A stretch of 64,000 nt of DNA, from positions 62,001 through 126,000 of IMG/VR virus record IMGVR_UViG_3300033153_015063; one strand, 5' to 3'. This document shows positions 23,700 to 61,759 of this stretch, piece by piece (positions within the stretch are counted from its first letter, which is position 1; every line of letters begins with the position of its first letter). The translations under genes were made by a program, and so were the position numbers. The notes below the pieces were generated by a model. It ran no database searches. It was given only the letters and a program-made list of their open reading frames with translations, and was not told the origin of the DNA.

Positions 23700-23762
23700 C
23701 CTTTAGCCAGAAAACAAACCCTCCCGAACTCTTTATATACTCAACACCCATTGTATTCCTTG

Positions 23763-24452
23763 ATGACCACCGTAGAGATACCTGAGGGTTCAGGGAATAG
23801 ATACCGCTATGATTATGAAGAGGGAGCTACGGTCTACAAGGGGCCGGTCGGCAATGCACCAGCCCTGGATGAGGAGGAATTTCTCTCTTTGATGGAAATG
23901 GGCATTCCCGAAGGGAGGATAGCCACCGAAAGAGATGGGATATACCGGAAAATCAAGGGTAACTACTACGACGACGACGGAAACCGCATCAAGGTATTCG
24001 TAAAGTACGGTTTCACCCAGTTGGGCAACCAGGAACCATACTTCTCCATCACAGCCGAGGCAGGGTCCAACAAAACCGGTTGGTCCAGTGGGATGCAGCA
24101 TGAAAAAATCGAGAACGCTTTCGAGGAGTTCCCAGAGCTCACCAGGTGGCATCTTACAAACATCAGTAATGGTCCGATGCACTATAATGCCAACGCCAAA
24201 CACCATTGGAAAAAAGATAAGCTTGACGCCTTCAAGAGTACCATCGTGTTCGGGGCCCTACCAGACGATGATATGGAAGACATCGAGTTTATGATGGACC
24301 AGTCTCCCGACGCCTTCCTTAACGATAGACTGCCAAAGTTGATGGAACAGTTTCGAAAGGACATGAAAAAGTTCAATGTTCCACCACCAAGAGGACAGAG
24401 AACACGAGAAGCTATCGACGTTGTGATGGCAGCAGCCTACGAAGACTGGTAA
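23763..24452 (+). CDS. leader-module protein with phage-type hypothetical cargo
   Basis: MTTVEIPEGSGNRYRYDYEEGATVYKGPVG; TTTATATA at 23732; leaderless start. Confidence 0.85.
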   Translation: MTTVEIPEGSGNRYRYDYEEGATVYKGPVGNAPALDEEEFLSLMEMGIPEGRIATERDGIYRKIKGNYYDDDGNRIKVFVKYGFTQLGNQEPYFSITAEAGSNKTGWSSGMQHEKIENAFEEFPELTRWHLTNISNGPMHYNANAKHHWKKDKLDAFKSTIVFGALPDDDMEDIEFMMDQSPDAFLNDRLPKLMEQFRKDMKKFNVPPPRGQRTREAIDVVMAAAYEDW

Positions 24453-24548
24453 CCACCTCCTCCATCATCCCTCCGTATCTTCCCACCTCCCACCTCCATC
24501 CTCCCCCGAACTCTTTAAATACTCCTCAGCCCATCCCACATTGATACC

Positions 24549-25646
24549 ATGACCGTCGTCGAAATCCCTCCAGGTTCAGGTAACCGCTACAAATACGTCT
24601 ACGAAGGCGGCAAGACTGTGTACAAGGGGCCGGTCGGCACGGCCCCGGAGCTTTCGGAGGGGGAGTTCCTGGAGATGTTCCAGGTTCAACTCACAGGACC
24701 CGAACCTACGAACCAGGATAAAGCAAATTCCTTCATCGCAGAGAATGAAGAAAAAATCAAGTCTGTCATCCGGGAAGGTCTCGGAGAAGAGTATGCCTGG
24801 GACCTTGACGACTGGGACGAAGATGAGCTCGTGGACCTCATCTACGAGATTCTCAACGACGCCAACAAGTTCGATGAACTGGGTGAAGAGGAACTTGAAC
24901 ACCGGGAACAGATTGCAGATATCGAGAAAGAACTCAAAGGTGCCCTTGAAGATGCTTCATCGACTGAAGAGAAAGAGAATCTGAAGTCCGAGGCAAAAAA
25001 GGAGATAGCCAAACTCAAATCGGCTTGGGATTGGGACGATGGAAAGGGGGCACTCATCGAGAGTCTGGTTTCCGACCTCGAACTCGAAGATGGACCATGG
25101 GCTGACTCCTTCAAATACGAACACCCCGACGAACCAGGCGAATGGGTGGCGATGAAAGAAGACGATGCCAAATCGGCCGCTATCGAGGATACCATCGGAC
25201 TCATTGAAGAAATGGGTGGCGATCTCGGTGATTTTGTCAAAGACCACGTCGACGAGAAGAAAGCGAAAAACTACTTCGAGATGGTTTATACCGAATGGGA
25301 TGAATCCTACATCGAAGATATCAGGGATGAAAAATCGAGCGATGAAGATGAATGGGCCAGTCGTCTTGAAGAGGAAATAGAAGAGTGGGGTGTTGATGAC
25401 GAAGACGAGCTCCGAGAGGTATTGACCAAGTCCAAACTCGATGAAGGACGTGGTGGATTTGACTACTACGCCAATAACTTCGGAGAAGATGAAGCTTTTA
25501 AGGTCGCCGATGGTAACGGGCTTATCGACATGCAGGCAGCGGCCGAGTTCGCTGTAAATACAGACGGTTGGGCCCACTCTCTTTCTGGCTACGACGGGAA
25601 CTATTCTGATATGAGTGGCGGTTACGTCACATTCAGGACAAATTAA
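24549..25646 (+). CDS. leader-module protein with very acidic cargo
   Basis: MTVVEIPPGSGNRYKYVYEGGKTVYKGPVG; own TTTAAATA box. Confidence 0.85.
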   Translation: MTVVEIPPGSGNRYKYVYEGGKTVYKGPVGTAPELSEGEFLEMFQVQLTGPEPTNQDKANSFIAENEEKIKSVIREGLGEEYAWDLDDWDEDELVDLIYEILNDANKFDELGEEELEHREQIADIEKELKGALEDASSTEEKENLKSEAKKEIAKLKSAWDWDDGKGALIESLVSDLELEDGPWADSFKYEHPDEPGEWVAMKEDDAKSAAIEDTIGLIEEMGGDLGDFVKDHVDEKKAKNYFEMVYTEWDESYIEDIRDEKSSDEDEWASRLEEEIEEWGVDDEDELREVLTKSKLDEGRGGFDYYANNFGEDEAFKVADGNGLIDMQAAAEFAVNTDGWAHSLSGYDGNYSDMSGGYVTFRTN

Positions 25647-25698
25647 CCAGGTCGTAGTCGCCGATCTCTTTTTAAACTTATCCAGACATCTTTTCTAC

Positions 25699-25971
25699 AT
25701 GGCCAACTATAGCACTGAAGACCTCGCCAAGATGCACCACTATCCCTACGTGAAAACCGTGACCCATCTCGTCGAGTTCTCCGAAGAGGTAAAAAAGAAG
25801 TTGCATAAGGAAATTATGAACATGACACCTGGCGACGAGGACCCCGTTGATGGTGTTGTGTTTCGGGACGTCGACATGAACACCATCCACATCTACTTCT
25901 ACGAAGAGCTCTCCGAACAGGCAGAGAACAAGCTCGATAAACTCGTTGAGAAGTGGGTCAACCCAACCTGA
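25699..25971 (+). CDS. hypothetical protein
   Basis: start at MANYSTEDL, downstream of a TTTTTAAA box. Confidence 0.65.
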   Translation: MANYSTEDLAKMHHYPYVKTVTHLVEFSEEVKKKLHKEIMNMTPGDEDPVDGVVFRDVDMNTIHIYFYEELSEQAENKLDKLVEKWVNPT

Positions 25972-26066
25972 CCATCCGATGAGGCAGTCCGAGTATCGTT
26001 CTTTCCCTTCTAGAGACCATCGACCATCCCGAAATACTTAAATATCACCCTATCATTCTATACCCA

Positions 26067-26369
26067 ATGACTGACAACAGGATGCTCATGGTCGTTGCTG
26101 CTGCCCTCGTCATCGTTGGACTCTTCCTTCACGGTGATGTAATCGGACTCGGTGTAACCCTTCCACTCTATGCAGGCTTCATCTTCTTCGGGTTACTGGT
26201 CTCCGTCGGACTGACCTGGCTCCTCGCCGAACTTGGCTGGCTTGACTTCGCTGAAGTGGATTCCATATTCAAGTTCAGGGGCTGGATAGTCATAATCACC
26301 CTCTTCGTCCTCTTCTATATACTACATCTCTACTGGCTCTCTCCAGATGTAGACCTCTTTTCCTACTGA
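26067..26369 (+). CDS. 3-TM membrane protein
   Basis: hydrophobic; TATA-like box upstream. Confidence 0.7.
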   Translation: MTDNRMLMVVAAALVIVGLFLHGDVIGLGVTLPLYAGFIFFGLLVSVGLTWLLAELGWLDFAEVDSIFKFRGWIVIITLFVLFYILHLYWLSPDVDLFSY

Positions 26370-26470
26370 CGACCCGACCCAACCCAACCTTTTATCCTCT
26401 CAATTTTCTTTTGCTGTTCTACTACCATCCACCAGGAAGGTATATAAGTGATACTTGAGATACATCTTCG

Positions 26471-33277: not shown

Positions 33278-34081
33278 TTACCTCTTCTGTTTGTAATCTG
33301 TGAAGTATTTACTCAAAGGCCACGGGACGCCACGGCCATGGCTGCTGTAAAGTATGTCCTGGGCAGCGTTGATACTCTTTGCCCCGGCGTTGTACTTCTT
33401 CACAGCCTTTCCAACGATGGGTTTGAGGCGTTTCAGCTCCTCGATGTCTCTGGCATCAAGCCAAAGACCATAGTTGTAAGAGTTTTCATCATGGTAGCTA
33501 CCAGGGTCCCTCCGTTCTTTGGCGAAAGCTCTGTGATGGTCATAAGCACCCCTGGTCAACCCTTCAGGCGTCATCACCTCTTGAGAGTCATAGGCGATGA
33601 AGAAACGAGCTGCCCTGTCGTCCCAGTCCCAATCGCTTGCATACCCATGCCCTTTTGGTCTCTGCCCATAAACATTGAGATAGGTCATCCCGGCGATACG
33701 TTCCTTTTGGACCTTGTACTTCCCAGGATATTTTTCATCGAGATGCTTCTGGAACGAGGTCTCCATACGCCTACTCGGAGCTTTTCCCTGATACTTGGGT
33801 AGGTGTGTGTCAGCCTCTTTCAAAAGTAGGATACCCTCTTCTTTTTCTTTGATGGATTGGTCGATGGACTTCTTTATCTCCCGGGTATCCAACTTCTCAA
33901 TGGCATCGTAGTTCTTGGAGTGTTCTGGTCTTGGTGTTATCTCTCCAACCATAGCCGCCATGAACTCTCCCTCCGTCAACTGAGGACTGTCTCCCACAGG
34001 TCCCTTGTAGACCGTAGATCCCTCTTCATATTCATAGCGGTATCTATTCCCTGAACCCTCAGGTATCTCTACGGTGGTCAT
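33278..34081 (-). CDS. leader-module protein
   Basis: MTTVEIPEGSGNRYRYEYEEGSTVYKGPVG; upstream 40 bp identical to that of gene 23763. Confidence 0.85.
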   Translation of the reverse strand: MTTVEIPEGSGNRYRYEYEEGSTVYKGPVGDSPQLTEGEFMAAMVGEITPRPEHSKNYDAIEKLDTREIKKSIDQSIKEKEEGILLLKEADTHLPKYQGKAPSRRMETSFQKHLDEKYPGKYKVQKERIAGMTYLNVYGQRPKGHGYASDWDWDDRAARFFIAYDSQEVMTPEGLTRGAYDHHRAFAKERRDPGSYHDENSYNYGLWLDARDIEELKRLKPIVGKAVKKYNAGAKSINAAQDILYSSHGRGVPWPLSKYFTDYKQKR

Positions 34082-34195
34082 CAAGGAATACAATGGGTGT
34101 TGAGTATATAAAGAGTTCGGGAAGATTCTGCATCTCAAATCGGCCGGTGCTGCTTCTCAAAAGAGTCCTACCCAACTTACCCAGCTACCTCCTTT

Positions 34196-34271
34196 TTACG
34201 CTTTTTACAGTTAACCCAGCCCAAACTATATAAAGACCAAGATGCGGGTAAGAGTTAGGTGATGTATGATG
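34196..34271 (+). promoter_or_regulatory. motif + TATA + UTR + RBS unit, copy 1 of 3
   Basis: 45-bp TATATAAAGACCAAGATGCGGGTAAGAGTTAGGTGATGTATGATG at 34227-34271. Confidence 0.9.
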
Positions 34272-35021
34272 GTTACAAAAGTAAAAATCGGAACGACCTT
34301 TCGCTCTGGACTTGCCGATGGAAACCCTCTCTGGAAGATTATCAAGAAAGTAGGATCTCGGCCGGCGACCTATCTCTGCGATGTCGTGAACGAACCCGTT
34401 GAGTTCAACGGAAAGATGTTTGATAGTGACTTCGCTGGCCACTCAGATACCTTCCTCAAGTCAGCAATCGAGCAGAAGCTCAGGTTCTCCGATGCTATCA
34501 ACCATCTGGTGGCCGAAAAAGAATCATTCTGGGACAGCCAGAAAGTTGGAACCACCTACCACTACCAGAGCTCCCGGGGCCAGTGGATTCGGGGAGTGGT
34601 TGATACCCGTGAGGACGACAAAGGTAGGACTGAGAAGTTCCTGAAGTGGACCAACCTTATCGGAGATTGGCGACATGAACTTCCTCAGGTCCGTGCTGAT
34701 GGTTCAGTCTACAAGGGTTACTATATTGAGAACATCGAGAAGGGAGATGGGAACTGTCCAAGTGAATCCCAACTCTATGAGTGTAACTCCGCCAAGTTCT
34801 CTGACAACCCTACCCAGATGGAACCTATCGACCTGACCATCCCCGAACCATCCGAGGATGAAAAGAAGGAACAAGAGCTCTGGCAGAAGGTCAACAAGGT
34901 CCGGGATCTCTTACAGTCCACCAACGAATCCATCAAGTCTGATGGAAAATCCCCCGAACATCTTCTCGATGAAATCAGGGGCGTCGTGGGTCAAGGTTAC
35001 AGACGCCTCTTCAATTTCTGA
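34266..35021 (+). CDS. phage-type hypothetical protein
   Basis: 251-aa ORF with strong promoter and RBS. Confidence 0.8.
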   Translation: MMVTKVKIGTTFRSGLADGNPLWKIIKKVGSRPATYLCDVVNEPVEFNGKMFDSDFAGHSDTFLKSAIEQKLRFSDAINHLVAEKESFWDSQKVGTTYHYQSSRGQWIRGVVDTREDDKGRTEKFLKWTNLIGDWRHELPQVRADGSVYKGYYIENIEKGDGNCPSESQLYECNSAKFSDNPTQMEPIDLTIPEPSEDEKKEQELWQKVNKVRDLLQSTNESIKSDGKSPEHLLDEIRGVVGQGYRRLFNF

Positions 35022-35343: not shown

Positions 35344-36255
35344 TTACGAATCTGATTGTCTGGCCCAGACGACCCAGCCCTGGGCCCTCTTCTGCATCCT
35401 GACAAAGTAACCGGCCTCCCTCCATGCATCCCGGATTGCATCTCCACCACTCCGTTCTTTCATAATGGCGATGACACGGTACTCCTTACCGTCGAACATC
35501 CTTTTGGAATTGATACCAGACTTCTTTGCCTTTGCCTTTGCCTTTTTGGCCTGACGGGCAGTCTTCAGGTTCCGCTTCGCCGCCCGTATCTGTTTCTTTG
35601 ACCTTGGAAGCTTGTGAGCCTCTTTGATGTTCTTCTTTGCCTGCTTCACCTGGGCCGATGTCGGGCGGTCAGAAATCTCGACGTCGATGGGGTCCCAACC
35701 CAGCTTCCCCCGGTACTTGTTGACCATACGGATGGCCTGCTGTTGCTTGGCCTTCGTGGCGAACTCACCCCTACCAGATTGTTTGATAGCGGCCCCGAGT
35801 GTCATGGTCCGTGATTGGAGGGTAGCCATGTTGATACCCTTCCGCCGGTCCTGGTCTATCTGTTCCAGAATCTTTTTCACTTCATCGGTGTGTGACAGAC
35901 CCTCTGGGTCGATGTCCTTTACCTGCCCCTTCGCACCGAGATAGATGGGTTTCCCTGACGCCATCTTTTTCCGTTCTGTGACCCGCTTTTTTGCTCTTCC
36001 CCCACCCTCTGTGGTCTCTCCCGTCCTCTCCCATGAATCTACGTAAGTGGCACGTTCGTCTCGCTTTCGGACCCTGGCGAGTTCCTCCTGGGCTGGCTTG
36101 ATGCGTTCCTCCAGTATGTCCTGGAGAGATTCCATGAACTCAGCCTCCTTCAGTGCCGGGGCCTCTCCCACAGGCCCCTTGTACACAGTTTTACCATTTT
36201 CGTACTCGTACCTGTATCTGTTACCGGACCCTGGTGGAATCTCAACGGTGGTCAT
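35344..36255 (-). CDS. leader-module protein with very basic, possibly nucleic-acid-binding cargo
   Basis: MTTVEIPPGSGNRYRYEYENGKTVYKGPVG; cargo paralogous to gene 43144. Confidence 0.85.
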   Translation of the reverse strand: MTTVEIPPGSGNRYRYEYENGKTVYKGPVGEAPALKEAEFMESLQDILEERIKPAQEELARVRKRDERATYVDSWERTGETTEGGGRAKKRVTERKKMASGKPIYLGAKGQVKDIDPEGLSHTDEVKKILEQIDQDRRKGINMATLQSRTMTLGAAIKQSGRGEFATKAKQQQAIRMVNKYRGKLGWDPIDVEISDRPTSAQVKQAKKNIKEAHKLPRSKKQIRAAKRNLKTARQAKKAKAKAKKSGINSKRMFDGKEYRVIAIMKERSGGDAIRDAWREAGYFVRMQKRAQGWVVWARQSDS

Positions 36256-36416
36256 CGGCTATGGATGAGCTGAGGAGTATTTAAAAGGTTCTCTTTTGAA
36301 GGGATTTACATCCTGTTCAATCTCAAACTATAGGGATGTACATCAAAACTATATAGATACTTACACTTATTTCACATAAAATAAGTTAAAAAGTGATTTA
36401 CTTTTATATCTTGCCT

Positions 36417-36953: not shown

Positions 36954-38123
36954 GTGACACACCTGAAGGAGATTCCGAAGGGCAGCGGAAACCTTTACAT
37001 CTACGGTTATAACTCAGGAAAGAAGAGTGATGAATACATAGGGGTCTACTCCAGGGAAAAATGGGTTGAGTTAGCCCTGATGGAGAAGCTACAGAAGAGT
37101 GTCCAGGAACTCAGAGAAATCGAAGGTAGTCGTAGTGAAGATGAACGGGAGGAGGATGAAAGTGAGTTGAACAATGACCTCATCTACCCAGACGACCCAC
37201 GTATCAGAGAGTGGCTCATCGACCCATCCAAACTCGACGTAGTCGGTGTAGACCTCGATCTCAAATCGGTCCGAGATGAAATAATAAGACTCAAAAAGGA
37301 TAGTAAAAGTCTCGAAAGGGAAATAGGTGAGATGGAAAAAATTGGTGTTGAGAAAGAACGTTACGAAAATCTACTCTGGCGTAAAAAGGCAAAGGACCTG
37401 GAATTGAGACAAGCCATTTTCATCGAAAAATTCCCAAACACTACATCTTTCATAGTTTTCAATCCAGAACATATGAAGAACGTCATAAACGGAAAATACA
37501 ACTATGTCCTTCAAATAGGAAAAGAAGTTGATGGTTTTTCTGACCTTGGGATTCCACCACGACACATCTACGACATAGGTATCAACTACTTCAATGGTTC
37601 TCAGGAGAATTATGGGGCAGCTGGATCGTATCAGAGAAAAAATGAACATCACTTGCATGGTCAGTTGACCATACCTTACTATAAAAACAAACGAAAAAAG
37701 GGTCCAACTGAAGATGATAAACATACCATAATCCATGAAGTGGGTCATCACGTCCATACATCTACACTCCTTGGTCACAAAAAATTAAAAAAGTATTACA
37801 CCAAGTGGAACGAAGAGATGCATAAAATATCACTGACAATGCCACCAGCCGGAACCATGTCCAGGGTCCAGGCATATGGGAGTGACCCGCACGAAACGTT
37901 CGCCGAGAGATACGCAACCTATATCGACGGTAAGATGATAACAAATAAACAGATATTAAATAAACAAGTTACAACACTAAAAAGTAAAACTAAATTAACT
38001 AAAAAAGAGAAGAAAGAGATAGAGATATTGGAGGATGAGATAACCGCATCTAAAACGATACTAGATTTTTTCTCTGAAACGTTTAAAGCTATCGAACAAG
38101 TAGACCTCAACAGGAGAGAATGA
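36954..38123 (+). CDS. divergent leader fused to a zincin-like metallopeptidase
   Basis: EIPKGSGNLYIY; IIHEVGHHVH followed by ETFAE. Confidence 0.8.
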   Translation: MTHLKEIPKGSGNLYIYGYNSGKKSDEYIGVYSREKWVELALMEKLQKSVQELREIEGSRSEDEREEDESELNNDLIYPDDPRIREWLIDPSKLDVVGVDLDLKSVRDEIIRLKKDSKSLEREIGEMEKIGVEKERYENLLWRKKAKDLELRQAIFIEKFPNTTSFIVFNPEHMKNVINGKYNYVLQIGKEVDGFSDLGIPPRHIYDIGINYFNGSQENYGAAGSYQRKNEHHLHGQLTIPYYKNKRKKGPTEDDKHTIIHEVGHHVHTSTLLGHKKLKKYYTKWNEEMHKISLTMPPAGTMSRVQAYGSDPHETFAERYATYIDGKMITNKQILNKQVTTLKSKTKLTKKEKKEIEILEDEITASKTILDFFSETFKAIEQVDLNRRE

Positions 38124-42406: not shown

Positions 42407-42949
42407 CTATATCCTTCGCCCAATGGACTGAACATGCCTATCACGGGTTTTGCCGACTATCGGGGTTCCAACCACGTAAAAGCTATCAGGGTACTTTGCC
42501 AGGTCTCTGGTCACCCATTCGTTCCCACCCATCGAAAGGCCATACTTATAGATGGCCGATCTGACACGTTTTGATTGTTGACGAAAACCCTTACCAACCC
42601 TGAAACCAAGTTTGAGAAGTTCATCTCCATCGAGTGTGTAGTAGTTCTTATATGCTTCTGGGTCCTTCAACCGGAATTTTACTACATTTTCGGTGACCTC
42701 GGCCTTCAGGAAATACCCTTCAGGCAAAGGGACGTTTGATACGAGACCAGGGTTTTCCCTGACCACAGTCGGAGAGAGATTCTTCAGGTCAATCGTTTTG
42801 ATGTCCTTGGTCATAGCCGCCATGAACTCCACTTCTGTCAACTCTGGTTCATTCCCAACTGGACCTCGATAATCATTTTTCTGTGTAGATTGATTATAAG
42901 TGTATCTATAAAGGTTCCTATCTCCTATAACTACAATGAAATCTGACAC
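42407..42949 (-). CDS. leader-module protein, variant form
   Basis: NLYRYTYNQSTQKNDYRGPVGNEPELTEVEFMAAM. Confidence 0.8.
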   Translation of the reverse strand: MSDFIVVIGDRNLYRYTYNQSTQKNDYRGPVGNEPELTEVEFMAAMTKDIKTIDLKNLSPTVVRENPGLVSNVPLPEGYFLKAEVTENVVKFRLKDPEAYKNYYTLDGDELLKLGFRVGKGFRQQSKRVRSAIYKYGLSMGGNEWVTRDLAKYPDSFYVVGTPIVGKTRDRHVQSIGRRI

Positions 42950-43143: not shown

Positions 43144-43641
43144 CTACTTCCCCTTCCTGATGGCTACAGAGAGTGGTTTCCAACCATGACCATCTCTCCA
43201 TTTATTGATTACCACAATGGCTTTTTTCTTCTGTTCATTCGTCATCTTCGAGGTCTGTTCCACAATACCCTTCAATCTCATCGAACGTGCATGTATGGTG
43301 CCCCTGTTAACACCTTCATCCATGTCCTCGTCGAGTTCGATGAGTATGTTTTTGACCTCACGAACATCCGAAAGACCCTTCGGGGCAAAATCTCTGACCT
43401 GCCCAGGTCTACCGAGATAGACATTCTCACCACCTGGTACTACAATCCTCTTCCCTTCGACGTATGTGACACGCCTATCCCTTTCTCTAACACCCACCAC
43501 CTTCATAATCTCCAGGAACTCCCCCTCGTCCAGGGCTGGTGCTTCTCCTACAGGCCCCTTGTACTGAGTTTGTTGTGTGGCCTGGTCATAGACATACCTG
43601 TATTTATTCCCTGAACCTGGAGGGATTTCAACTATGGACAT
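43144..43641 (-). CDS. leader-module protein
   Basis: MSIVEIPPGSGNKYRYVYDQATQQTQYKGPVG. Confidence 0.85.
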   Translation of the reverse strand: MSIVEIPPGSGNKYRYVYDQATQQTQYKGPVGEAPALDEGEFLEIMKVVGVRERDRRVTYVEGKRIVVPGGENVYLGRPGQVRDFAPKGLSDVREVKNILIELDEDMDEGVNRGTIHARSMRLKGIVEQTSKMTNEQKKKAIVVINKWRDGHGWKPLSVAIRKGK

Positions 43642-43702
43642 TACAGACACCTAGGATGATTATGGATGAGCTGAGGAGTATATAAATGTCCCGTTAACTT
43701 AT

Positions 43703-44402: not shown

Positions 44403-44612
44403 TTATTTCTTATCTGGAGAATGAGATACATTCTCCCTGAACAACCATTCTCCATCCCAACCAAAATCGACCCAGTAATCATCACATCCTTCACAGTAGT
44501 AGATGTATTCACCTACGTTATCACCGATTGGTTTTCCCTCTTCGTTAACTGGATGCCAGTGACAACAAGTACACAGACCACAACCACCAGGGCACCCCTC
44601 ACTATCACTCAT
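44403..44612 (-). CDS. small Cys-rich protein
   Basis: ATGA coupling to the leader gene; 7 Cys. Confidence 0.6.
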   Translation of the reverse strand: MSDSEGCPGGCGLCTCCHWHPVNEEGKPIGDNVGEYIYYCEGCDDYWVDFGWDGEWLFRENVSHSPDKK

Positions 44613-45112
44613 CGTAACCAGGAAGATGGCTCAGGATTTTCCCACTTATCCTTAACCTTCTCTACCAATTCATCATCTCTTTTCTGGACCAACTCAGATA
44701 CCTTCATCCCTTTCTCGGTCAGTCCGCCCCAATATTCAGCGTAAGAATATTCTTTAAACATAGTTCTGATTTTCCCTCCAGTTAATCTCCACTCCATCAG
44801 ACCTTTTCGTTCCATTACCTTATAGGTGACCATTGGATAAAGGATGTGTTGTCCTCTACTTATATGGAAGTTAGTGTCTGAATCTACATCCCACCCTTTT
44901 CTCCCAAACAGTATAAGAACTTCCTTCTGTGTAGGGGAAAGTTCTTTGTAGATTTCTTCGATTTCTTTATTCTCAGTACCCATCCCCTTCAAGAACTCAG
45001 CCTCTCCCAGCTCAGGAGAATCCCCGACCGGCCCCTTGTACTGTGTCTTGCCGCCTTCATATTCGTAGCGGTATCTATTCCCTGAGCCTGGTGGAATCTC
45101 TACAGTGGTCAT
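44609..45112 (-). CDS. leader-module protein, possible winged-helix cargo
   Basis: MTTVEIPPGSGNRYRYEYEGGKTQYKGPVG; LSPTQKEVL...LTEKG. Confidence 0.85.
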   Translation of the reverse strand: MTTVEIPPGSGNRYRYEYEGGKTQYKGPVGDSPELGEAEFLKGMGTENKEIEEIYKELSPTQKEVLILFGRKGWDVDSDTNFHISRGQHILYPMVTYKVMERKGLMEWRLTGGKIRTMFKEYSYAEYWGGLTEKGMKVSELVQKRDDELVEKVKDKWENPEPSSWLR

Positions 45113-45267
45113 TGGTTGGAGATAACCGGGAGGCTATTTAAAGATTGGTAGAAAAGTATGACACCCGGCGTCGCTGTCATCACGGAGTCCGTTGACAGCA
45201 ACACCAGGGTCTGGCTGGGCAAACCCACCTGATAATAACTTGAGCTCTCTTTGTTCTTAAATGTTTT

Positions 45268-45651: not shown

Positions 45652-46224
45652 CTACTCCTCGGCCTCGAAATCCTCTTCCTCAAGGTCAGCAAGTCGATCC
45701 TCTATCTCCTCTAATCTATTGTCAATAGCATTATCCTCTTTTTTCAGTTGCAGGACCTTTCTTTTCAGGTCTGTGACATGCGTCCTATTCTCAGCAGCAT
45801 TGTCACTCACAGATTCTATTTCAAATTCTATGATGCTGAATGCTTTGTTCTGTTCGTTGTCGATGACTATAATAGCGTCGACAACGTTCTCTATCTTCTC
45901 CTGGTCGGTTTGGGTTTCCTCTATGTCGTCTTCTATCTCTTCGAGTTGATTGACGACCCGGCCGGCAGCATCTTTGAAACCCCCTACACCCTCCAATACT
46001 TTCGGCCTCGGTGGATCAAAATCTCTCCAGTCATCGACCCACTCCACAAAATCTCCGACCCCGACAACTACATCATCGTCAATTCCCATCATCTCCAGGA
46101 ACTCCTCCTCATCCAGGGCTGGTGCATTGCCGACCGGCCCCTTGTAGACCGTAGCCTTGGTCTCAGCATCATAGACGTATTTGTATCTGTTACCGCTTCC
46201 AGGAGGGATTTCGACTATGGACAT
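45652..46224 (-). CDS. leader-module protein with acidic coiled-coil cargo
   Basis: MSIVEIPPGSGNRYKYVYDAETKATVYKGPVG. Confidence 0.85.
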   Translation of the reverse strand: MSIVEIPPGSGNRYKYVYDAETKATVYKGPVGNAPALDEEEFLEMMGIDDDVVVGVGDFVEWVDDWRDFDPPRPKVLEGVGGFKDAAGRVVNQLEEIEDDIEETQTDQEKIENVVDAIIVIDNEQNKAFSIIEFEIESVSDNAAENRTHVTDLKRKVLQLKKEDNAIDNRLEEIEDRLADLEEEDFEAEE

Positions 46225-46280
46225 TAAAGGATGATAGGGGTGGGAGGATAAGAAGATTGTGGTAGGTCATAGGTCACTAC

Positions 46281-46688
46281 CTAAAACTCCACTTGAAGCT
46301 CGTTGTAATAGTCCCGAGGGCTTTTCGGGGAACGGCCGGCAATCAAATCACTGTTGAATAAATCGACCATATCACCGATAGTATCAGCAGCCCTATTTAA
46401 ATAATCTTCACAATCTGTATCACAATCTATAGGTAAATCTAACTGTTTTAACTGTTCAGATGTTATATAGTCATTGATATATGCATTATCGTCCTCTGCA
46501 AATTGTGAAAAGAAATATGTTAATCCAGACATCTGATAATGGTTCACCGTATTCCTGAACATCTCCAGGAACTCCCCCTCGCTCATCTCAGGAGAATCCC
46601 CGACCGGCCCCTTGTAGACCGTAGCTCCCTCTTCATATTCATAGCGGTATCTGTTACCTGAGCCAGGAGGGATCTCGACAATGGTCAT
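46281..46688 (-). CDS. leader-module protein with AT-rich cargo
   Basis: MTIVEIPPGSGNRYRYEYEEGATVYKGPVG. Confidence 0.85.
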   Translation of the reverse strand: MTIVEIPPGSGNRYRYEYEEGATVYKGPVGDSPEMSEGEFLEMFRNTVNHYQMSGLTYFFSQFAEDDNAYINDYITSEQLKQLDLPIDCDTDCEDYLNRAADTIGDMVDLFNSDLIAGRSPKSPRDYYNELQVEF

Positions 46689-46824
46689 CAAGGAATAGAA
46701 GGGGTGGTGGGTATAAAAATGTGATGGTGGGGTGTGGTGGGTGCCCCGGTTCCTTCATTTCTATCTTCCATTTTCCATCACTACTCAATTTTTTCATTTA
46801 ACTTACAACTAATTATATGAATGG

Positions 46825-55712: not shown

Positions 55713-55713
55713 C

Positions 55714-58045: not shown

Positions 58046-59345
58046 TTTTCAGGACCTTCACGTAGTTGACAATGGTCTCCTTATTTCCGTTGTAGCTGTT
58101 CTGCTTCTTGACCTTGGCAGAGATGGTAACGATTGTTCCTTCCTGGATGTTGTCCCGATTCTCATTGGCGAACCACTTGACGGATCGACCAGTGGGGTTA
58201 TCATCGTCATCGACCTCGTCCATGATATGAAGCGTCCAGGCACCATACCCACTCTGGCCCGACCTGTGTGCCTTGACATGGACCCGCACACTGACCTTAT
58301 CACCTTCTTTTCCGAGGAATCCATTGGCTGTGTTGGTGGGTGTCTTCGAGGCAAGGCTCTGGGCGTTCTCACGGGTGTAGGCGGAAACGATGCTGGCCAC
58401 GATACCGAGAGACCTCCGGGTGAGGGCGATGGATTTTGAAGCCGCATTCATGTTCCTTTCGTAGTCCGACATGGGTTTCAGGGCCCGGCGGGCCCAGTCA
58501 AGGGCATCGGCAGCGAGTTTCTGGTCGGCGTCGGTGGGATTCCACCGTTTCCATTCACTCTTGGTCATGGTCTCGGGGGGGTCGAAAAGGCGGAGTGCGA
58601 TATTGGCCGTTGAGTGGACACCATCCTCCTCTGCCTTCCATTTCGGCATCCAGCCGCCGATACGGATGCAGACAGCGACAGCGGTCAGATAGTCTTTGGT
58701 GTCAATCTCCCAGTAATCGTGGCTATACTCACCCATGTCATCAATGGACCGCATGACCACGTTGATGGTCTTCTGATAGTTGGCGAGGGTCTTGGGGTCG
58801 ATGCCACCGAGATAATCTCGGACGCACTTCGATCCAACCTGCTTGTAGACGCCGGTGTCCTCTTCGAGAACCACGTAGGTGATCTTCCGGGCGGATCTAC
58901 CTGCCTTCTTGGTCCCACAGTGGTCACACATAAACCGACCCCGGAACGTCTCGGGGATGACCTCGCCAGGCACAGAGTAGAACACCTCGGTACCCTTTTT
59001 ATCCTCGGTCTTGAGTTTCTCGATGGACCCGATGAGCTGGAACCCCTCGATATGGGGTGCCTCACCGGTTATTCGAACAATGGCCCACTGGCAGAGTTCT
59101 GCGTAATAATTGCTGGGCTTTCCGTTCACCCTGATGGGACACACCTGGTCCTTGGCCTTTCCCCTGAAGTCCTTTTCCGTCCACTTTTCGATGAGTGTCA
59201 TGGTGGGCTCAGGGAATCCGTACTTCAGGGCCTTCTTTGCCTGCTGCCCGATTTTCTTCTCCAGGGTCTCCAGATTATACTGGGGGATGAGGAAGAGTTC
59301 AGGGTCCTTCCCAACAAGTGTTTCGGCGGTTTCATAATCCATCAT
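58032..59345 (-). CDS. phage-type protein with a zinc motif and a C-terminal OB-fold-like region
   Basis: CDHC...QVGSKCVRDYLG; ISAKVKKQNSYNGNKETIV. Confidence 0.8.
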   Translation of the reverse strand: MMDYETAETLVGKDPELFLIPQYNLETLEKKIGQQAKKALKYGFPEPTMTLIEKWTEKDFRGKAKDQVCPIRVNGKPSNYYAELCQWAIVRITGEAPHIEGFQLIGSIEKLKTEDKKGTEVFYSVPGEVIPETFRGRFMCDHCGTKKAGRSARKITYVVLEEDTGVYKQVGSKCVRDYLGGIDPKTLANYQKTINVVMRSIDDMGEYSHDYWEIDTKDYLTAVAVCIRIGGWMPKWKAEEDGVHSTANIALRLFDPPETMTKSEWKRWNPTDADQKLAADALDWARRALKPMSDYERNMNAASKSIALTRRSLGIVASIVSAYTRENAQSLASKTPTNTANGFLGKEGDKVSVRVHVKAHRSGQSGYGAWTLHIMDEVDDDDNPTGRSVKWFANENRDNIQEGTIVTISAKVKKQNSYNGNKETIVNYVKVLKNGRK

Positions 59346-59415
59346 ACATCACCTAACTCTTACCCGCATCTTGGTCTTTATATAGTTTTGGCTGGGTTAA
59401 CTGTAAAAAGCGTAA
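59340..59415 (-). promoter_or_regulatory. motif + TATA + UTR + RBS unit, copy 3 of 3
   Basis: one mismatch to 34196-34271. Confidence 0.9.
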
Positions 59416-59466
59416 AATGGTTAAGGAACAACAACCTTAAAAACACATCTTTTCTATCTGGGCCAT

Positions 59467-59865
59467 ATGGATCGTAAATCGTGGTTGTGGGGTTTTGCTA
59501 AGGAGATGAAATGCCCTGGTTGTGGTAAGGCATCAACTATGACCCCAGGTGAAGATGGGTGGGAGTGTGATAGTGGCTGTCACTTTACCCCTGAAGGTAA
59601 ACTTGATAAAGTAGCTACGATGATGAAGGGTACCACAAACGTAATCAAATCTTCGTATCACAACCAATTGGAGGTTGATGTACTCGAAGCATTTACCATG
59701 ATGGAGGTAAAAAAAGAACACCTACGAGATATATCCGTAGAACGTTCTGGTCGATACGTAGTGGTGAAAAGCCCGAACCCAGGTATCCTTATCGGTTCTG
59801 GTGGATGCACAGTCAAAGGTGCAGGTGAACATATTGGCTGTCGTATCAAAGTTTTGAAGAGTTAG
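59467..59865 (+). CDS. zinc ribbon plus KH-like domain protein
   Basis: CPGC...CDSGC; PGILIGSGG (GxxG loop). Confidence 0.65.
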   Translation: MDRKSWLWGFAKEMKCPGCGKASTMTPGEDGWECDSGCHFTPEGKLDKVATMMKGTTNVIKSSYHNQLEVDVLEAFTMMEVKKEHLRDISVERSGRYVVVKSPNPGILIGSGGCTVKGAGEHIGCRIKVLKS

Positions 59866-60674
59866 TTGAGGTCACCCTTCAGTCTTCCCATGACATCTGT
59901 CATATATTCTTTTCCTTCCTTGGACCAGAGTGGGTCGGTAGATGGGTGGACTTCGAGTTGGTAACCAAGTATTCCCGACGCCGTCCTGAGAATGTCGTGT
60001 TCTACGGAGTTCTTTCGCACGATGAACATGGATTTTCTCTTCAGTTTATGTTCATGGATGAACCGGGCAAGATTCTTGCCAGAGTGATTTATACTGTCGC
60101 GGTACGCCCTCCAGTCCCATTTCATGTCGTGCTTCTCGTTGAACTGACGTTGCCAACCTGGTGTTGCAATGTGAGGACGTATTGGGAAGTAATCTTCTGG
60201 AATTGGCCCAAGTGTTTTTGAAAGTGCAAAGGTATTGACATCATCTGGTCTGAACCCTACTTTATCCATAGCCTGATAGTAATTTTTGAAGGAAGGAACA
60301 GTATCTTTTGCTCTAACCCATCTTGGTTCAGGCGACTCCGGGATGAACACTACAAAGTCTTCTGCTTTTATAGGATAATCCATAACAATTTTCTGCCATT
60401 CTTTGACATGCCTGCTAGTGGCTAGGTCGGCGACCTCACTGATATTGAAAGCGGTTAACTCCGGTTCGATGTCTGGATTCTGTGATAATGTTTCTGATAA
60501 TAATCTATCCCGGAGTTTTTGTTCTTTCTGGCCAACAACCTGGAACATCTCCAGGAACTCCCCCTCCGAAAGCTCCGGGGCCGTGCCGACCGGCCCCTTG
60601 TACACAGTCTTGCCGTCTTCGTACTCGTACTTATAGCGGTTGCCGCTTCCAGGAGGGATTTCAACTATGGACAT
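59862..60674 (-). CDS. leader-module protein
   Basis: MSIVEIPPGSGNRYKYEYEDGKTVYKGPVG. Confidence 0.85.
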   Translation of the reverse strand: MSIVEIPPGSGNRYKYEYEDGKTVYKGPVGTAPELSEGEFLEMFQVVGQKEQKLRDRLLSETLSQNPDIEPELTAFNISEVADLATSRHVKEWQKIVMDYPIKAEDFVVFIPESPEPRWVRAKDTVPSFKNYYQAMDKVGFRPDDVNTFALSKTLGPIPEDYFPIRPHIATPGWQRQFNEKHDMKWDWRAYRDSINHSGKNLARFIHEHKLKRKSMFIVRKNSVEHDILRTASGILGYQLEVHPSTDPLWSKEGKEYMTDVMGRLKGDLN

Positions 60675-61009
60675 TACAGACACCTAGGATGATTATGGAT
60701 GAGCTGAGGAGTATATAAAATGTTTGATGGGGAGTGAGGAGGTGGGAGGTGGTGGGAGGATGGGTCGATTTGGGAGAGTAGTGTGAAAAATACCTGGGTT
60801 TGTCTACCGACAGTCACCTATCTCGTATCACTACGAGGTTTGTTACGCCCTCCGCATCAGCTTCGGCCCCAACCGGGTGTCTCTTTTGGTATCCTTCACG
60901 ATACGTTTCATCATCAGGTGTCCTTTTAAAGATTGTGTGATAGGTGATAGGTAATAGACACCAATAACCAACAGAACTCTTTATATCCTCCCTCCCCTAT
61001 CACTCTTCA

Positions 61010-61759
61010 ATGACCACTGTAGAAATCCCACCAGGTAGTGGTAATCATTACCGCTATGTCTACGAAGAGGGAGCTACGGTCTACAAGGGGCCGGTCGGCA
61101 ATGCACCTGAGCTGAGTGAGGATGAGTTCATGGCTATTCTGGGGCGTAGTAATCTAAAGGAACATCCCCGCTACGATACCTACAAATGGACACTTAATAC
61201 AACTAAGCAACAAAATCCTGGATACTCCAACGAGTATTATATCTGGCAGACACTTTCAATCCTATCTGGTAGACTTTCTCATCAGGAGATGGTATCTCTC
61301 GATACTGCATTGGTTGAAGATGGTGTATGGAAGCAGAAAGCCTATATCGTCGAAGTAGACGGAAAGGAGATGGATAAGTTTTGGTGGGATAAGGATACTA
61401 CGAAGGTAGTCAGAAAAAGTGTACTGCGTTCTGGTGAAGGTTTCATGGGTGAGATAGTCACTGTAGACCCGAGAGACGAAGGTATCTCAACAGCATATCA
61501 TCCTGACCAGAACCTAACCACAGGTCTTCCACTTTTTCGATGGAAAGAGTTTATCCCTGGTGGTCTTGGGGCCGGTAAACACCCCGCCAACTTCGACCCT
61601 GACCAGATACGGAAGGGCATCAATGTTGAGATGGAGCACGTGGTTGGTTCCACTTCACTTACAGAACAGGAAAAGATTCGAGTAGCGGCCGAGATAGCCA
61701 CTGACCATCTTATGGAAGACCCGAAATACTACGATAAACTGGAAACCCTGGGTTTGTAA
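61010..61759 (+). CDS. leader-module protein with a C-terminal DUF5661-like domain
   Basis: QIRKGINVEMEH...IATDHLMEDPKYYDKL. Confidence 0.8.
   Translation: MTTVEIPPGSGNHYRYVYEEGATVYKGPVGNAPELSEDEFMAILGRSNLKEHPRYDTYKWTLNTTKQQNPGYSNEYYIWQTLSILSGRLSHQEMVSLDTALVEDGVWKQKAYIVEVDGKEMDKFWWDKDTTKVVRKSVLRSGEGFMGEIVTVDPRDEGISTAYHPDQNLTTGLPLFRWKEFIPGGLGAGKHPANFDPDQIRKGINVEMEHVVGSTSLTEQEKIRVAAEIATDHLMEDPKYYDKLETLGL

What the first reader, a model, noticed from the sequence alone, without database searches (positions are those of the whole stretch)
23722..61122. Leader cassettes are DNA mosaics that include the promoter, suggesting a recombination hub for cargo exchange
Seen: genes 23763 and 34081 share an identical 40-bp promoter and their first codons. 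The second half of the 23763 module instead matches 61010 (GAAGAGGGAGCTACGGTCTACAAGGGGCCGGTCGGCAATGCACC) and 46224. Gene 60674 has the promoter and 5' end of 43641 (about 65 identical bp) but the 3' 79 bp of the 24549 module. Genes 45112 and 46688 share a 30-bp block. Identity covers synonymous and non-coding sites. Some cargos (for example 46281-46550) are visibly more AT-rich than the module. Inference: promoter plus module acts as a portable expression cassette that captures and swaps ORFs by homologous recombination, like promoter-repeat shuffling in T4-type phages but creating protein fusions.
Basis: partly seen in the sequence, partly recalled or inferred. Interest (0 to 1): 0.85.

Follow-up and report, generated by a model that had tools for sequence, protein, structure and literature searches.

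The report
Mosaic promoter-plus-domain gene family in virus
About forty genes of a 242-kb uncultivated, probably archaeal, virus start with the same 45-residue domain and promoter, and repeated copy-pasting between the copies has turned this shared DNA into a patchwork.

Summary
In detail: all five named identities are exact. The window is positions 62001-126000 of a 242,596-bp viral contig. At least 38 genes, 12 of them in the window, start with a 44-46-codon module. Its predicted fold is three strands plus a helix, and no Pfam, NCBIfam or PHROG family matches it. The downstream parts ("cargos") are almost all unrelated to each other.

Most copies have a TATA box 30-31 nt before the ATG. That spacing fits archaeal leaderless transcripts, so the promoter abuts the coding repeat. 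The mosaic is statistically solid:
- PHI test: 0 of 2000 permutations reached the observed value.
- At least 14 recombination events in 117 nt.
- 141 of 528 pairs carry conversion-like tracts.
- Neighbouring segments give uncorrelated trees.

The family is old (synonymous difference 0.60) and the peptide is under purifying selection. Module-cargo fusions are shared with related viruses, yet the module DNA has been overwritten within the genome.

Best explanation: short-tract ectopic gene conversion among paralogues (concerted evolution). Active cargo swapping is only partly supported. What the domain does is unknown; my guess is a shared docking or targeting tag. I class this as a new variant of a known kind.

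The parts
23722..24452 (+). Module gene, 229 aa. TATA box 23732-23739, module 23763-23894, cargo to 24452.
   Evidence: Promoter and first 50 nt identical to gene 34081; 3' half identical to 61010 and 46224. Cargo orthologue P0106 at 55%.
24504..25646 (+). Module gene, 365 aa, very acidic cargo. TATA box 24514-24521, module 24549-24680.
   Evidence: 79 nt (+59..+138) identical to gene 60674. Promoter class shared with contig copies c57057, c211566 and c15121.
33278..34122 (-). Module gene, 267 aa. TATA box 34105-34112, module 33950-34081.
   Evidence: Cargo orthologue P0062/L037 at 68-71% identity. Third-codon-position identity 7/27 in the module versus 80/146 in the cargo.
35344..36295 (-). 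Module gene, 303 aa, basic cargo. TATA box 36278-36285, module 36124-36255.
   Evidence: Cargo is paralogous to that of gene 43641 (35%) and related to P0140 in the relative L055.
43144..43696 (-). Module gene, 165 aa. TATA box 43679-43686 (45 nt from the ATG), module 43504-43641 (46 codons).
   Evidence: (D18). 68 nt (-45..+23) identical to gene 60674.
44609..45152 (-). Module gene, 167 aa. TATA box 45135-45142, module 44981-45112.
   Evidence: 30-nt block shared with gene 46688.
45652..46264 (-). Module gene, 190 aa, coiled-coil-like acidic cargo. Weak TATA box 46247-46254, module 46087-46224 (46 codons).
   Evidence: 74 nt at 89% identity with 23826-23899 (I16).
46281..46729 (-). Module gene, 135 aa. 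TATA box 46712-46719, module 46557-46688. Cargo GC 0.37.
59862..60729 (-). Module gene, 270 aa. TATA box 60712-60719, module 60543-60674. A chimera of the 43641-type 5' end and the 24549-type 3' end.
   Evidence: (D18, I4).
60970..61759 (+). Module gene, 249 aa, with a DUF5661 cargo. TATA-like box 60980-60987, module 61010-61141.
   Evidence: (PF18905, E 4.6e-11).
61768..62476 (+). Module gene, 222 aa. TATA-like box 61778-61785, module 61808-61945 (46 codons).
62542..63106 (+). Truncated module (62542-62655, 38 codons, no helix), followed by a 157-codon open frame (62636-63106) in the +1 frame.
   Evidence: The 114 nt are 100% identical to contig 51824-51937, which sits in the same way in front of a CCA-adding-enzyme homologue.
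2835..3656 (-). Gene, 273 aa, with a degenerate module (EIPKGSGNYYAY..EYLG).
   Evidence: (D17).
36954..38123 (+). Gene, 389 aa, with a degenerate module (EIPKGSGNLYIYGY..EYIG).
42407..42949 (-). Gene, 180 aa, with a partial module. The first strand and loop are lost; YRGPVGNEPELTEVEFMAAM is kept.
   Evidence: (D14).
34191..34272 (+). Non-coding promoter and leader cassette (ACGCTTTTTACAGTT, then TATATAAAG, then AGGTGAT, then ATG). Further copies at 59339-59420(-) and 55894-55942(-), in front of unrelated genes.
   Evidence: (I15, I22, D20).

Best explanation
The window lies in the genome of an uncultivated large dsDNA virus. The promoters look archaeal, and the DNA polymerase is nearest to those of archaeal tailed viruses.

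The virus carries a lineage-specific family of about 40 genes. Each gene has three parts: a TATA promoter that abuts the ATG (leaderless or near-leaderless mRNA), an N-terminal domain of 44-46 residues predicted as three strands plus a helix, and a C-terminal part unrelated to those of the other members.

The peptide is held by purifying selection, so the module is the only stretch of homology among dispersed genes. The virus's own recombination and replication machinery repeatedly copies short tracts (about 30-114 nt) from one copy into another. This is ectopic gene conversion or template switching. The tracts often run past the ATG into the adjacent promoter.

The result is a combinatorial patchwork and concerted evolution of the module within the genome, while the cargos evolve vertically.

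Shown:
- the mosaic;
- the selection on the peptide;
- the promoter geometry;
- the conserved fusions in relatives;
- the overwriting of module DNA.

Inferred:
- the enzymology of conversion;
- leaderless transcription;
- an archaeal host.

Speculative: the domain is a common docking or targeting tag that brings diverse effectors to one partner or place. One option is virion packaging, as with the T4 capsid-targeting sequence.
For: Family size and spread:
- 38 canonical copies, plus one at the contig junction, in the 228.8 kb fetched of the 242.6-kb contig.
- 288 proteins match the module profile in 1.84 billion representatives. The module is N-terminal in nearly all of those listed.

Mosaic:
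- Class table.
- PHI test 0 of 2000; minimum of 14 recombination events.
- 141 of 528 pairs with tracts at p<=0.01.
- Mantel r between adjacent segments -0.02 to 0.19.

Old family under protein-level selection:
- Synonymous difference 0.60, non-synonymous 0.18.
- Invariant residues are written with 2-4 different codons.
- AlphaFold2 mean pLDDT 88.8: strands at 2-5, 13-19 and 22-29, helix at 37-48.

Promoter geometry:
- TTTWWATA starts 30-31 nt before the ATG.
- 24 of the 43 such TATA-ATG pairs in the fetched genome are module genes.
- In relatives, genes inside operons instead have GGTGA ribosome-binding sites.

Concerted evolution:
- Cargo orthologues in relatives keep the module.
- Third-position identity at conserved residues is 7/27 in the module versus 80/146 in the cargo for 34081/L037 (Fisher p=0.0065). 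Pooled over three pairs it is 20/73 versus 123/255 (p=0.002).
- Within the genome, modules attached to unrelated cargos reach 87-96% identity.
- None of the orthologue-paired focal modules has the 2-4-residue N-terminal extension that most of their counterparts in relatives carry.

Recombination genes on the contig: a Sak4-like annealing protein, a PD-(D/E)XK nuclease and a 5'-3' exonuclease.
Against: - No reads were available, so tract boundaries and long-range order rest on one consensus assembly.
- The host domain is inferred, not shown. Structural genes and any prohead protease could not be identified.
- The function of the domain has no direct support. Foldseek found nothing at E<0.5.
- The only sequence lead is a 17-19-residue resemblance to inorganic pyrophosphatase.
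- Some features point to rearrangement as well as conversion: truncated, internal and out-of-frame module copies, and an indel that carries two module genes.
Confidence: 0.75

Rival explanations
1. Promoter plus module is a portable fusion cassette that captures and swaps ORFs by homologous recombination. Crossovers, excision and reinsertion at the module move the cargos.
For: - Cargos are of independent origin: Ham1p_like, RelA_SpoT and DUF5661, and of 36 cargos of 30 residues or more compared, all but two pairs are unrelated.
- An identical 114-nt truncated module sits exactly at the start of two unrelated ORFs, window 62542 and contig 51824. The Pfam head domain of the CCA-adding enzyme begins 2 residues after the junction.
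- Modules occur inside or at the end of other ORFs (c39509, c24162, c215234).
- Module genes 23763 and 24549 lie in a 3.6-kb indel relative to a syntenic relative.
- Tandem direct arrays (23763/24549; 45112/46224/46688; 61010/61808/62542) have the geometry needed for excision.
- Non-coding cassettes of the PeSL type exist in the same genome.
Against: - At least seven module-cargo pairings are conserved in diverged relatives.
- Tracts are short and linkage decays within about 50 nt, as expected for conversion without exchange of flanks.
- No cargo was found at two sites or with signs of recent transfer.
- Both 'capture' junctions are out of frame.
Confidence: 0.3
2. On function: the module is a virion-targeting or delivery tag like the T4 capsid-targeting sequence. 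The cargos would be packaged and ejected into the host as early effectors.
For: - It is the same logic as the T4 internal proteins: diverse proteins that share only a conserved N-terminal targeting sequence (PMC3012670).
- An invariant [L/I/M]-x-E at residues 35-37 resembles the L/I-x-E site of the T4 prohead protease (my own knowledge).
- Enzyme cargos such as a RelA/SpoT-like protein would make sense as injected effectors.
Against: - The module is a 45-residue folded domain, not a 10-20-residue leader.
- E37 starts the predicted helix, so its conservation may be structural.
- No prohead protease, scaffold or capsid gene could be recognised (and the Pfam lists).
- Nucleotide-pool and tRNA enzymes (Ham1, CCA-adding) normally act in the cytoplasm.
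Confidence: 0.2
3. The mosaics are assembly chimeras of paralogous repeats or of co-assembled strains.
For: - The contig ends inside a module, in a 64-mer that occurs three times.
- Short contigs of relatives often end in modules. So the repeats do trouble assemblers.
Against: - The longest identical tracts (30-114 nt) are shorter than a typical short read of about 150 nt, so single reads would span each block junction. The read length of this sample was not checked.
- Misjoins would swap flanks; they would not create several breakpoints inside 135 nt.
- Module-cargo junctions are confirmed independently by orthologues in other samples.
- Local order is confirmed by synteny.
- Every copy is a different combination in a unique context.
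Confidence: 0.03
4. The nucleotide identity reflects selection on the DNA or RNA itself (promoter, initiation region of leaderless mRNA, codon choice), not recombination.
For: - The BRE/TATA core is under functional constraint.
- Similar TATA boxes precede non-module genes.
Against: - Invariant residues use 2-4 codons and synonymous difference averages 0.60, so no single nucleotide sequence is required.
- Identity comes in discrete alternative blocks shared by changing partners.
- The unconstrained 20 nt between the TATA box and the ATG are identical within classes.
Confidence: 0.04
5. The module DNA is the target of a site-specific recombinase (integron-like), for example the two serine recombinases at 47860-48678 and 49283-50233.
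For: Two serine recombinase genes lie in the region. A perfect 113-nt inverted repeat brackets them.
Against: - Breakpoints are spread all along the module rather than at one crossover site.
- The 113-nt repeat is not module sequence.
- There is no conserved hairpin or core site in the module alignment.
Confidence: 0.04

Closest known systems
PeSL mobile regulatory cassettes of T4-type phages (PMC2839356, PMC4122927), and the TATA-plus-inverted-repeat motifs of haloarchaeal virus HGTV-1 (as described in PMC3950731)
   Same: - Conserved repeats of about 100 bp that contain a promoter sit in front of many ORFans in variable regions of a large viral genome.
- They offer homology for the virus's own recombination system.
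- The non-coding cassette at 34191-34272, 59339-59420 and 55894-55942 is of this kind.
   Different: - Here the main repeat runs 132-138 nt into the coding region and encodes a folded domain under purifying selection.
- The promoter is of the archaeal TATA type.
- There is no conserved stem-loop or terminator next to it.
- Mini-circles could not be tested.
T4 internal proteins sharing a capsid-targeting sequence (PMC3012670)
   Same: Many otherwise unrelated small proteins of one large virus share only a conserved N-terminal element. Their loci are variable.
   Different: - The T4 element is a short leader that the prohead protease removes; this one is a 45-residue domain.
- Neither packaging nor cleavage is shown.
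- There is no sequence similarity.
Lineage-specific expansions of genes with a conserved N-terminal domain and variable C-termini in large DNA viruses (baculovirus bro genes, Bro-N and KilA-N families; my own knowledge)
   Same: - Multi-copy, dispersed genes.
- A conserved N-terminal domain fused to diverse C-terminal parts.
- An association with recombination and genome rearrangement.
   Different: - No homology to Bro-N or KilA-N (no Pfam hit).
- The domain is acidic and much smaller.
- The copy number, about 40 in 242 kb, is unusually high.
Concerted evolution of multigene families by ectopic gene conversion (general; my own knowledge)
   Same: - Short non-reciprocal tracts.
- Paralogues within a genome are more alike than orthologues between genomes.
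- Phylogenetic incongruence along the repeat.
   Different: Conversion is confined to a 45-codon 5' module plus the promoter of genes that are otherwise unrelated. It occurs in a viral genome.
Family I inorganic pyrophosphatase, strands 1-2 (PDB 2prd, 1qez, 1twl, 1ude)
   Same: Residues 3-19 of the module (VEIPxGSGN[RK]Y.Y.Y) match the pyrophosphatase motif V(I/E)(I/V)PxGSxNKYEYD. Four of the five best PDB hits are pyrophosphatases, the best at E=0.0054.
   Different: - Only 17-19 residues match.
- The rest of the 170-residue fold and the Asp-rich active site are absent.
- Pfam PF00719 is not hit.
- This is a lead on origin, not membership.

Membership tests
PeSL-type mobile regulatory cassette | A conserved repeat containing a promoter directly upstream of many ORFs in variable regions | tested here: met
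   TATA box 30-31 nt before the ATG in 24 module genes. Promoter and leader classes are shared at 100% identity between copies.
PeSL-type mobile regulatory cassette | An adjacent conserved stem-loop acting as terminator or attenuator | tested here: not met
   Nothing is conserved upstream of the BRE/TATA in the alignment of 26 copies. T-runs after the genes belong to the next TATA box.
PeSL-type mobile regulatory cassette | The repeat is intergenic and ends at the start codon | tested here: not met
   Homology continues 132-138 nt into the ORF and encodes a conserved domain. The separate cassette at 34191-34272 does meet this feature.
PeSL-type mobile regulatory cassette | Recombination between repeats yields excised mini-circles, insertions and deletions | not testable with these tools
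   No reads or infected cultures. The only indirect sign is a 3.6-kb indel carrying two module genes relative to L055.
T4-like capsid-targeting sequence proteins | A conserved N-terminal element on otherwise unrelated proteins | tested here: met
   38 copies. Of 36 cargos of 30 residues or more compared, only two pairs are related.
T4-like capsid-targeting sequence proteins | A short leader removed by the prohead protease at L/I-x-E | tested here: inconclusive
   [L/I/M]-x-E is invariant at residues 35-37. But the element is a folded 45-residue domain, and cleavage cannot be tested.
T4-like capsid-targeting sequence proteins | Prohead protease and scaffold encoded; proteins present in virions | tested here: inconclusive
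   No protease, scaffold or capsid family was recognised in the Pfam lists or PHROG scans. However, no structural gene at all was recognised.
Family I inorganic pyrophosphatase | A full barrel of about 170 residues with the Asp-rich metal site (Pfam PF00719) | tested here: not met
   Only residues 3-19 match. There is no PF00719 hit at E<=0.1.
AP2 / integrase-N-like three-strand-plus-helix DNA-binding domains | Significant structural or sequence similarity | tested here: not met
   Foldseek E values of 1.8 or more (PDB) and 0.54 or more (BFVD), probability below 0.5.
Bro-N / KilA-N expansions | Homology of the N-terminal domain to Bro-N or KilA-N | tested here: not met
   No Pfam, NCBIfam or PHROG hit to the module.
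Archaeal leaderless transcription unit | TATA box centred about 26-27 nt upstream of a start site that coincides with the ATG, with no ribosome-binding site | tested here: met
   The motif starts 29-31 nt before the ATG in 26 of the 43 genes that have it, and the leaders are pyrimidine-rich with no SD. The start site itself was not mapped.

The most novel reading that the evidence does not exclude
Promoter plus module is a true mobile fusion cassette of a giant archaeal virus. It would be the coding counterpart of an integron or PeSL. It would attach a shared delivery or docking domain, perhaps derived from a pyrophosphatase fragment, to captured ORFs, and so build a fast-changing arsenal of about 40 co-regulated effectors. 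The two identical truncated copies in the +1 frame, in front of a CCA-adding enzyme and of ORF 62636-63106, would then be either fresh capture events or frameshift-dependent fusions.
Probability: 0.15. Interest if true: 0.85.

Novelty: new variant of a known kind. Interest (0 to 1): 0.6.

Why it matters
- It defines an undescribed domain family. There are 288 protein clusters, all from uncultivated viruses, with no Pfam, NCBIfam or PHROG model.
- The family makes up roughly a tenth of the genes of a 242-kb virus.
- It is a very clean natural example of concerted evolution confined to a 45-codon module plus its promoter.
- It suggests that the promoter-cassette shuffling known from T4-type phages extends into coding sequence when transcripts are leaderless.
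- If the host is archaeal, the genome is well above the 144 kb that a 2014 review gave as the largest archaeal virus genome (HGTV-1; PMC3950731).
- The shared domain is a handle for finding what these about 40 unknown proteins have in common: a partner, a compartment or the virion.

Tried and rejected
Searches that found nothing for the module:
- Pfam, NCBIfam and PHROGs.
- The phage database, by DNA and by protein.
- IMG/VR, which holds the module only on this contig.
- GTDB genomes, which gave only a chance 11-residue match.
- Literature searches on the sample identifiers.
- Foldseek against PDB and BFVD had nothing below E 0.5. AP2- and HNH-associated hits recur but are not significant.
- The ESM Atlas gave scores of about 0.5, far below a usable level.

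Attempts to find the capsid, portal or terminase genes:
- One weak PHROG terminase hit (E 0.003) and nothing else.

Ideas rejected:
- AT-rich foreign cargo: cargo GC equals genome GC.
- A single tree for all segments.
- Selection at the nucleotide level.
- Assembly chimera: the tracts are shorter than a typical short read, and orthologues confirm the junctions.
- A site-specific recombinase site: the breakpoints are dispersed.
- An internal indel in the truncated module: it is colinear with canonical modules, so the frame change is at the junction itself.
- A halophilic 'salt-in' host: the cargos are only mildly acidic.

Full report
**What the sequence is.** The window is positions 62001-126000 of JGI contig Ga0366824_1000500, which is also IMGVR_UViG_3300033153_015063 and is 242,596 bp long. 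I fetched 228.8 kb of it.

Its first and last 64 nt are identical, and joining them would complete one module gene. However, that 64-mer occurs three times in the contig. Circular closure is therefore plausible but not proven.

Genes elsewhere on the contig include:
- a family B DNA polymerase, RFC-like clamp loaders, gyrase subunits and topoisomerase IA;
- class II ribonucleotide reductase, a ThyA-like protein and dCMP deaminase;
- HMUDK_hel and many N6/N4 methyltransferases;
- a Sak4-like annealing protein, a PD-(D/E)XK nuclease and a 5'-3' exonuclease.

The polymerase's best matches in the phage collection are haloarchaeal tailed viruses (HF1, HF2, HRTV) at about 30% identity. No tRNA or Rfam family is present in the window. 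Structural genes could not be recognised.

**The observation.**
- 23763 and 34081 are identical for 91 nt (-41..+50).
- The quoted 44-mer is at 23817-23860 and 61064-61107. Its last 35 nt are also at 46121-46155 on the minus strand.
- 60674 equals 43641 for 68 nt (-45..+23) and equals 24549 for 79 nt (+59..+138).
- 45112 and 46688 share 30 nt.
- 46281-46550 has GC 0.37.

The window holds 11 complete module genes, with ATG at 23763+, 24549+, 34081-, 36255-, 43641-, 45112-, 46224-, 46688-, 60674-, 61010+ and 61808+. It also holds one truncated copy (62542+) and three degenerate ones (genes 2835-3656-, 36954-38123+ and 42407-42949-). Genome-wide there are at least 38 canonical copies plus the one at the contig junction.

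**The mosaic is real and pervasive.** I sorted each copy into classes for five segments: the promoter and leader, the first 54 nt, the variable linker, the YKGPVGxxP block, and the helix block. This gives a combinatorial table in which partners change from block to block.

| Test (33-35 copies, 117 coding nt) | Result |
|---|---|
| PHI test | 0 of 2000 permutations reached the observed value, at three window sizes |
| Four-gamete test | at least 14 recombination events |
| GENECONV-like permutation of site order | 141 of 528 pairs at p<=0.01 (about 5 expected); 56 at the floor of the test |
| Mantel correlation between adjacent segments | -0.02 to 0.19; only promoter versus first 50 nt is weakly significant (r=0.19, p=0.0035) |

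The refuting condition 'a single tree explains all segments' is therefore not met. Linkage is lost within about 50 nt.

**An old family with a selected peptide.**
- Pairwise synonymous difference averages 0.60 and non-synonymous difference 0.18.
- The invariant residues are V4, E5, I6, P7, G9, S10, G11, N12, Y14, Y16, Y18, T23, Y25, G27, P28, V29, G30, P33 and E37. Those checked codon by codon are written with 2-4 different codons.
- The protein is therefore what is conserved. The long identical tracts are recent overlays on anciently diverged copies.
- With a 51-sequence alignment, AlphaFold2 gives mean pLDDT 88.8 and pTM 0.63. It predicts strands at 2-5, 13-19 and 22-29, and a helix at 37-48.
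- The module has no Pfam, NCBIfam or PHROG match and no significant Foldseek match.
- A profile search of 1.84 billion representative proteins finds 288 members at E<=1e-3. In nearly all of the 150 listed the protein is small and the module sits at the N-terminus. Those I traced came from metagenome contigs.
- The only sequence lead is that residues 3-19 resemble strands 1-2 of family I inorganic pyrophosphatases. The best match is 2prd at E 0.0054, and four of the top five PDB hits are pyrophosphatases. I treat this as a possible origin, not as membership.

**Why the promoter is part of the repeat.**
- The motif TTTWWATA starts 30-31 nt before the ATG in most module genes. The exceptions are 35 nt (gene 24549) and 45 nt (genes 43641 and 60674).
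- 24 of the 43 TATA-ATG pairs of this kind in the fetched genome belong to module genes.
- The stretch between the box and the ATG is pyrimidine-rich and has no ribosome-binding site.
- In relatives, module genes that lie inside operons instead have GGTGA sites.
- A TATA box centred about 27 nt upstream of the ATG is the geometry of archaeal leaderless transcripts (established knowledge). The start sites themselves were not mapped.
- With no leader, promoter and coding homology are contiguous, so a conversion tract that starts in the module easily runs into the promoter.
- Promoter class and coding class are nevertheless only weakly linked. Copies with the same promoter class can differ right from the ATG.

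**The cargos.**
- Of the 36 cargos of 30 residues or more, only two pairs are related by BLASTP: 36255/43641, and c26464/45112.
- Three cargos carry known domains. Contig gene 166656 has Ham1p_like starting at residue 48, straight after the module. Contig gene 53300 has RelA_SpoT. Window gene 61010 has DUF5661.
- The module has therefore been joined to proteins of independent origin.
- Mean cargo GC is 0.463, the same as the genome at 0.464. The module is the outlier at 0.535.

**Relatives.** The module is found on 26 short contigs from three other JGI samples, often several per contig, and on a 116.7-kb contig, Ga0452204_000775.

That contig shares a 57%-identical polymerase with this one. 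It is syntenic with window 22276-33267: the PrsW-like gene, two PKD genes, the TSP3-repeat gene and the next gene are all in order. The 3.6 kb at 22834-26470, which include module genes 23763 and 24549, are absent from it.

At least seven focal cargos have orthologues in relatives that also carry the module. Examples are 34081 and P0062 at 68%, 23763 and P0106 at 55%, c57057 and P0009 at 43%, and c19828 and P0107 at 42%. The fusions therefore predate the divergence of these viruses.

The module DNA, however, does not share that history. For 34081 versus its orthologue in L037, third-codon-position identity at conserved residues is 7/27 in the module and 80/146 in the cargo (Fisher p=0.0065). 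Pooled over three pairs it is 20/73 versus 123/255 (p=0.002). Meanwhile the same module is 87% identical to paralogues with unrelated cargos, and 100% identical to 23763 over its first 50 nt plus the promoter.

None of the orthologue-paired focal modules has the 2-4-residue N-terminal extension (such as M-G-K-E-S) that most of their counterparts in relatives carry.

| Source | Mean pairwise identity | Maximum identity | Longest shared run (nt) |
|---|---|---|---|
| Focal genome | 0.72 | 0.96 | 95 |
| Relatives' samples | 0.64-0.65 | 0.77-0.78 | 27-46 |

This is concerted evolution. Modules are homogenised within a genome while cargos descend vertically.

**Mechanism.** The best-supported reading is frequent, short, non-reciprocal copying between the about 40 dispersed modules. 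This is ectopic gene conversion or template switching during recombination-dependent replication. The only homology available is the selected domain and its abutting promoter. The contig encodes plausible enzymes for this.

This accounts for the tract lengths, the many breakpoints, the loss of linkage, the overwriting of orthologous modules, and the stable cargos.

The evidence for it consists of footprints rather than exchanges:
- modules inside or at the end of other ORFs (c39509 = P0010, c24162, c215234);
- copies without a start codon (c163255, c220289);
- the indel described above;
- the pair described next.

**An unexplained pair.** Window 62542-62655 and contig 51824-51937 are 100% identical for 114 nt, from the ATG to GAACTGGGA. 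That is 38 codons, and the helix is missing. The flanks are unrelated on both sides.

In both places the downstream ORF is in the +1 frame and stays open back to a TAG inside the module. At the contig copy that ORF is a CCA-adding-enzyme homologue. Its Pfam head domain begins 2 residues after the junction and 13 residues before the annotated ATG. So the complete domain has no start codon of its own.

The truncated module is colinear with canonical modules, so the frame change lies at the junction itself. This could be any of the following:
- a dead fusion spread by conversion;
- donation of a promoter only;
- a frameshift-dependent fusion;
- a consensus error in a repeat.

I cannot decide among these without reads or proteomics.

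**Function of the domain.** This part is inference. The domain is a folded, conserved unit with an invariant glycine-rich loop (PxGSGN) and a tyrosine ladder, followed by variable stretches that look like linkers. It sits on many unrelated proteins that are mostly driven by one promoter type. That pattern fits a common docking or targeting tag.

The nearest functional analogy is the T4 capsid-targeting sequence on diverse internal proteins (PMC3012670). An invariant [L/I/M]-x-E is present. But the element is a domain rather than a leader, and no protease or capsid gene could be identified. I give that specific version about 0.2.

**Comparison with what is known.**
- The DNA-level behaviour is closest to the PeSL promoter cassettes of T4-type phages (PMC2839356, PMC4122927) and to the TATA-containing motifs noted in haloarchaeal virus HGTV-1 (PMC3950731).
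- A true non-coding cassette of that kind exists here too. It is 82 nt long, 98% identical, and precedes three unrelated genes at 34191-34272, 59339-59420 and 55894-55942.
- The module differs in that it extends into coding sequence, encodes a selected domain, and lacks a stem-loop.
- The gene-family pattern resembles bro-like expansions in large DNA viruses, but without homology to them.

I therefore class it as a new variant of a known kind.

Noticed in passing
window 36417-36529 and 51888-52000: A perfect 113-nt inverted repeat, containing a TATA box and a G6/C5 hairpin, brackets a 15.3-kb segment. The segment holds two serine recombinase genes (47860-48678 -, 49283-50233 +) and the module genes 43641, 45112, 46224 and 46688. 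It may be an invertible or mobile segment.
   Followed up: partly
window 50857-51800: An ORF-free stretch of about 1.2 kb. It starts with six tandem 27-nt units, each carrying a TATA box (AGAGCTTTATATACTCACAAGTAGGCC). About 700 nt of GTAG- and G-rich repeats follow, punctuated by GAATTAAATG. There is no Rfam hit. It could be an origin of replication or a source of non-coding RNA.
   Followed up: partly
window 34191-34272(+), 59339-59420(-), 55894-55942(-): A non-coding promoter and leader cassette (ACGCTTTTTACAGTT, then TATATAAAG, then AGGTGAT, then ATG), 98% identical. It precedes three genes whose products are unrelated. Similar cassettes lie downstream of contig genes c17657 and c220289.
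   Followed up: yes
window 62542-63106 and L003 7639-9109: Two 100%-identical truncated modules (114 nt) lie in the +1 frame in front of unrelated ORFs. One ORF is a CCA-adding-enzyme homologue with no start codon for its full head domain. The next gene in that operon is a module-RelA_SpoT fusion.
   Followed up: partly
window 22834-26470 versus L055 603-653: A 3.6-kb indel relative to a syntenic related virus (Ga0452204_000775). It contains gene 22884-23699, module genes 23763 and 24549, and two small ORFs.
   Followed up: yes
window 29337-32729: A 1130-aa protein with 17 thrombospondin type 3 repeats plus a PKD domain. Two PKD/CarboxypepD_reg proteins precede it (26471-27985, 27967-29346). 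The trio is conserved in the relative and is probably surface or adhesion proteins.
   Followed up: partly
window 23090-23173: Four perfect 21-nt tandem repeats inside ORF 22884-23699, encoding a repeated heptapeptide.
   Followed up: no
contig ends (L022, L053) and contig 215158: The contig begins and ends inside a module. The 64-nt terminal overlap is a three-copy repeat, so the apparent circular closure is not proof of completeness.
   Followed up: yes
module residues 3-19, for example window 24555-24605: The motif VEIPxGSGN[RK]YxYxY matches strands 1-2 of family I inorganic pyrophosphatases (2prd, E 0.0054). Several cargos or neighbours handle nucleotides or pyrophosphate (Ham1, RelA/SpoT, CCA-adding enzyme).
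   Followed up: partly
whole contig (L001-L005, L049-L054): The genome carries many N6/N4 methyltransferases, HMUDK_hel, a 619-aa ThyA-like protein, dCMP deaminase and GmrSD_N. This suggests heavily modified DNA. If the host is archaeal, the genome is far larger than the 144 kb that a 2014 review gave as the largest archaeal virus genome (PMC3950731).
   Followed up: no
window 53185-54498 and 58032-59345: Two 437-aa ORFs of equal length on the minus strand are not detectably similar by BLASTP. Only 58032-59345 carries the shared non-coding cassette.
   Followed up: yes
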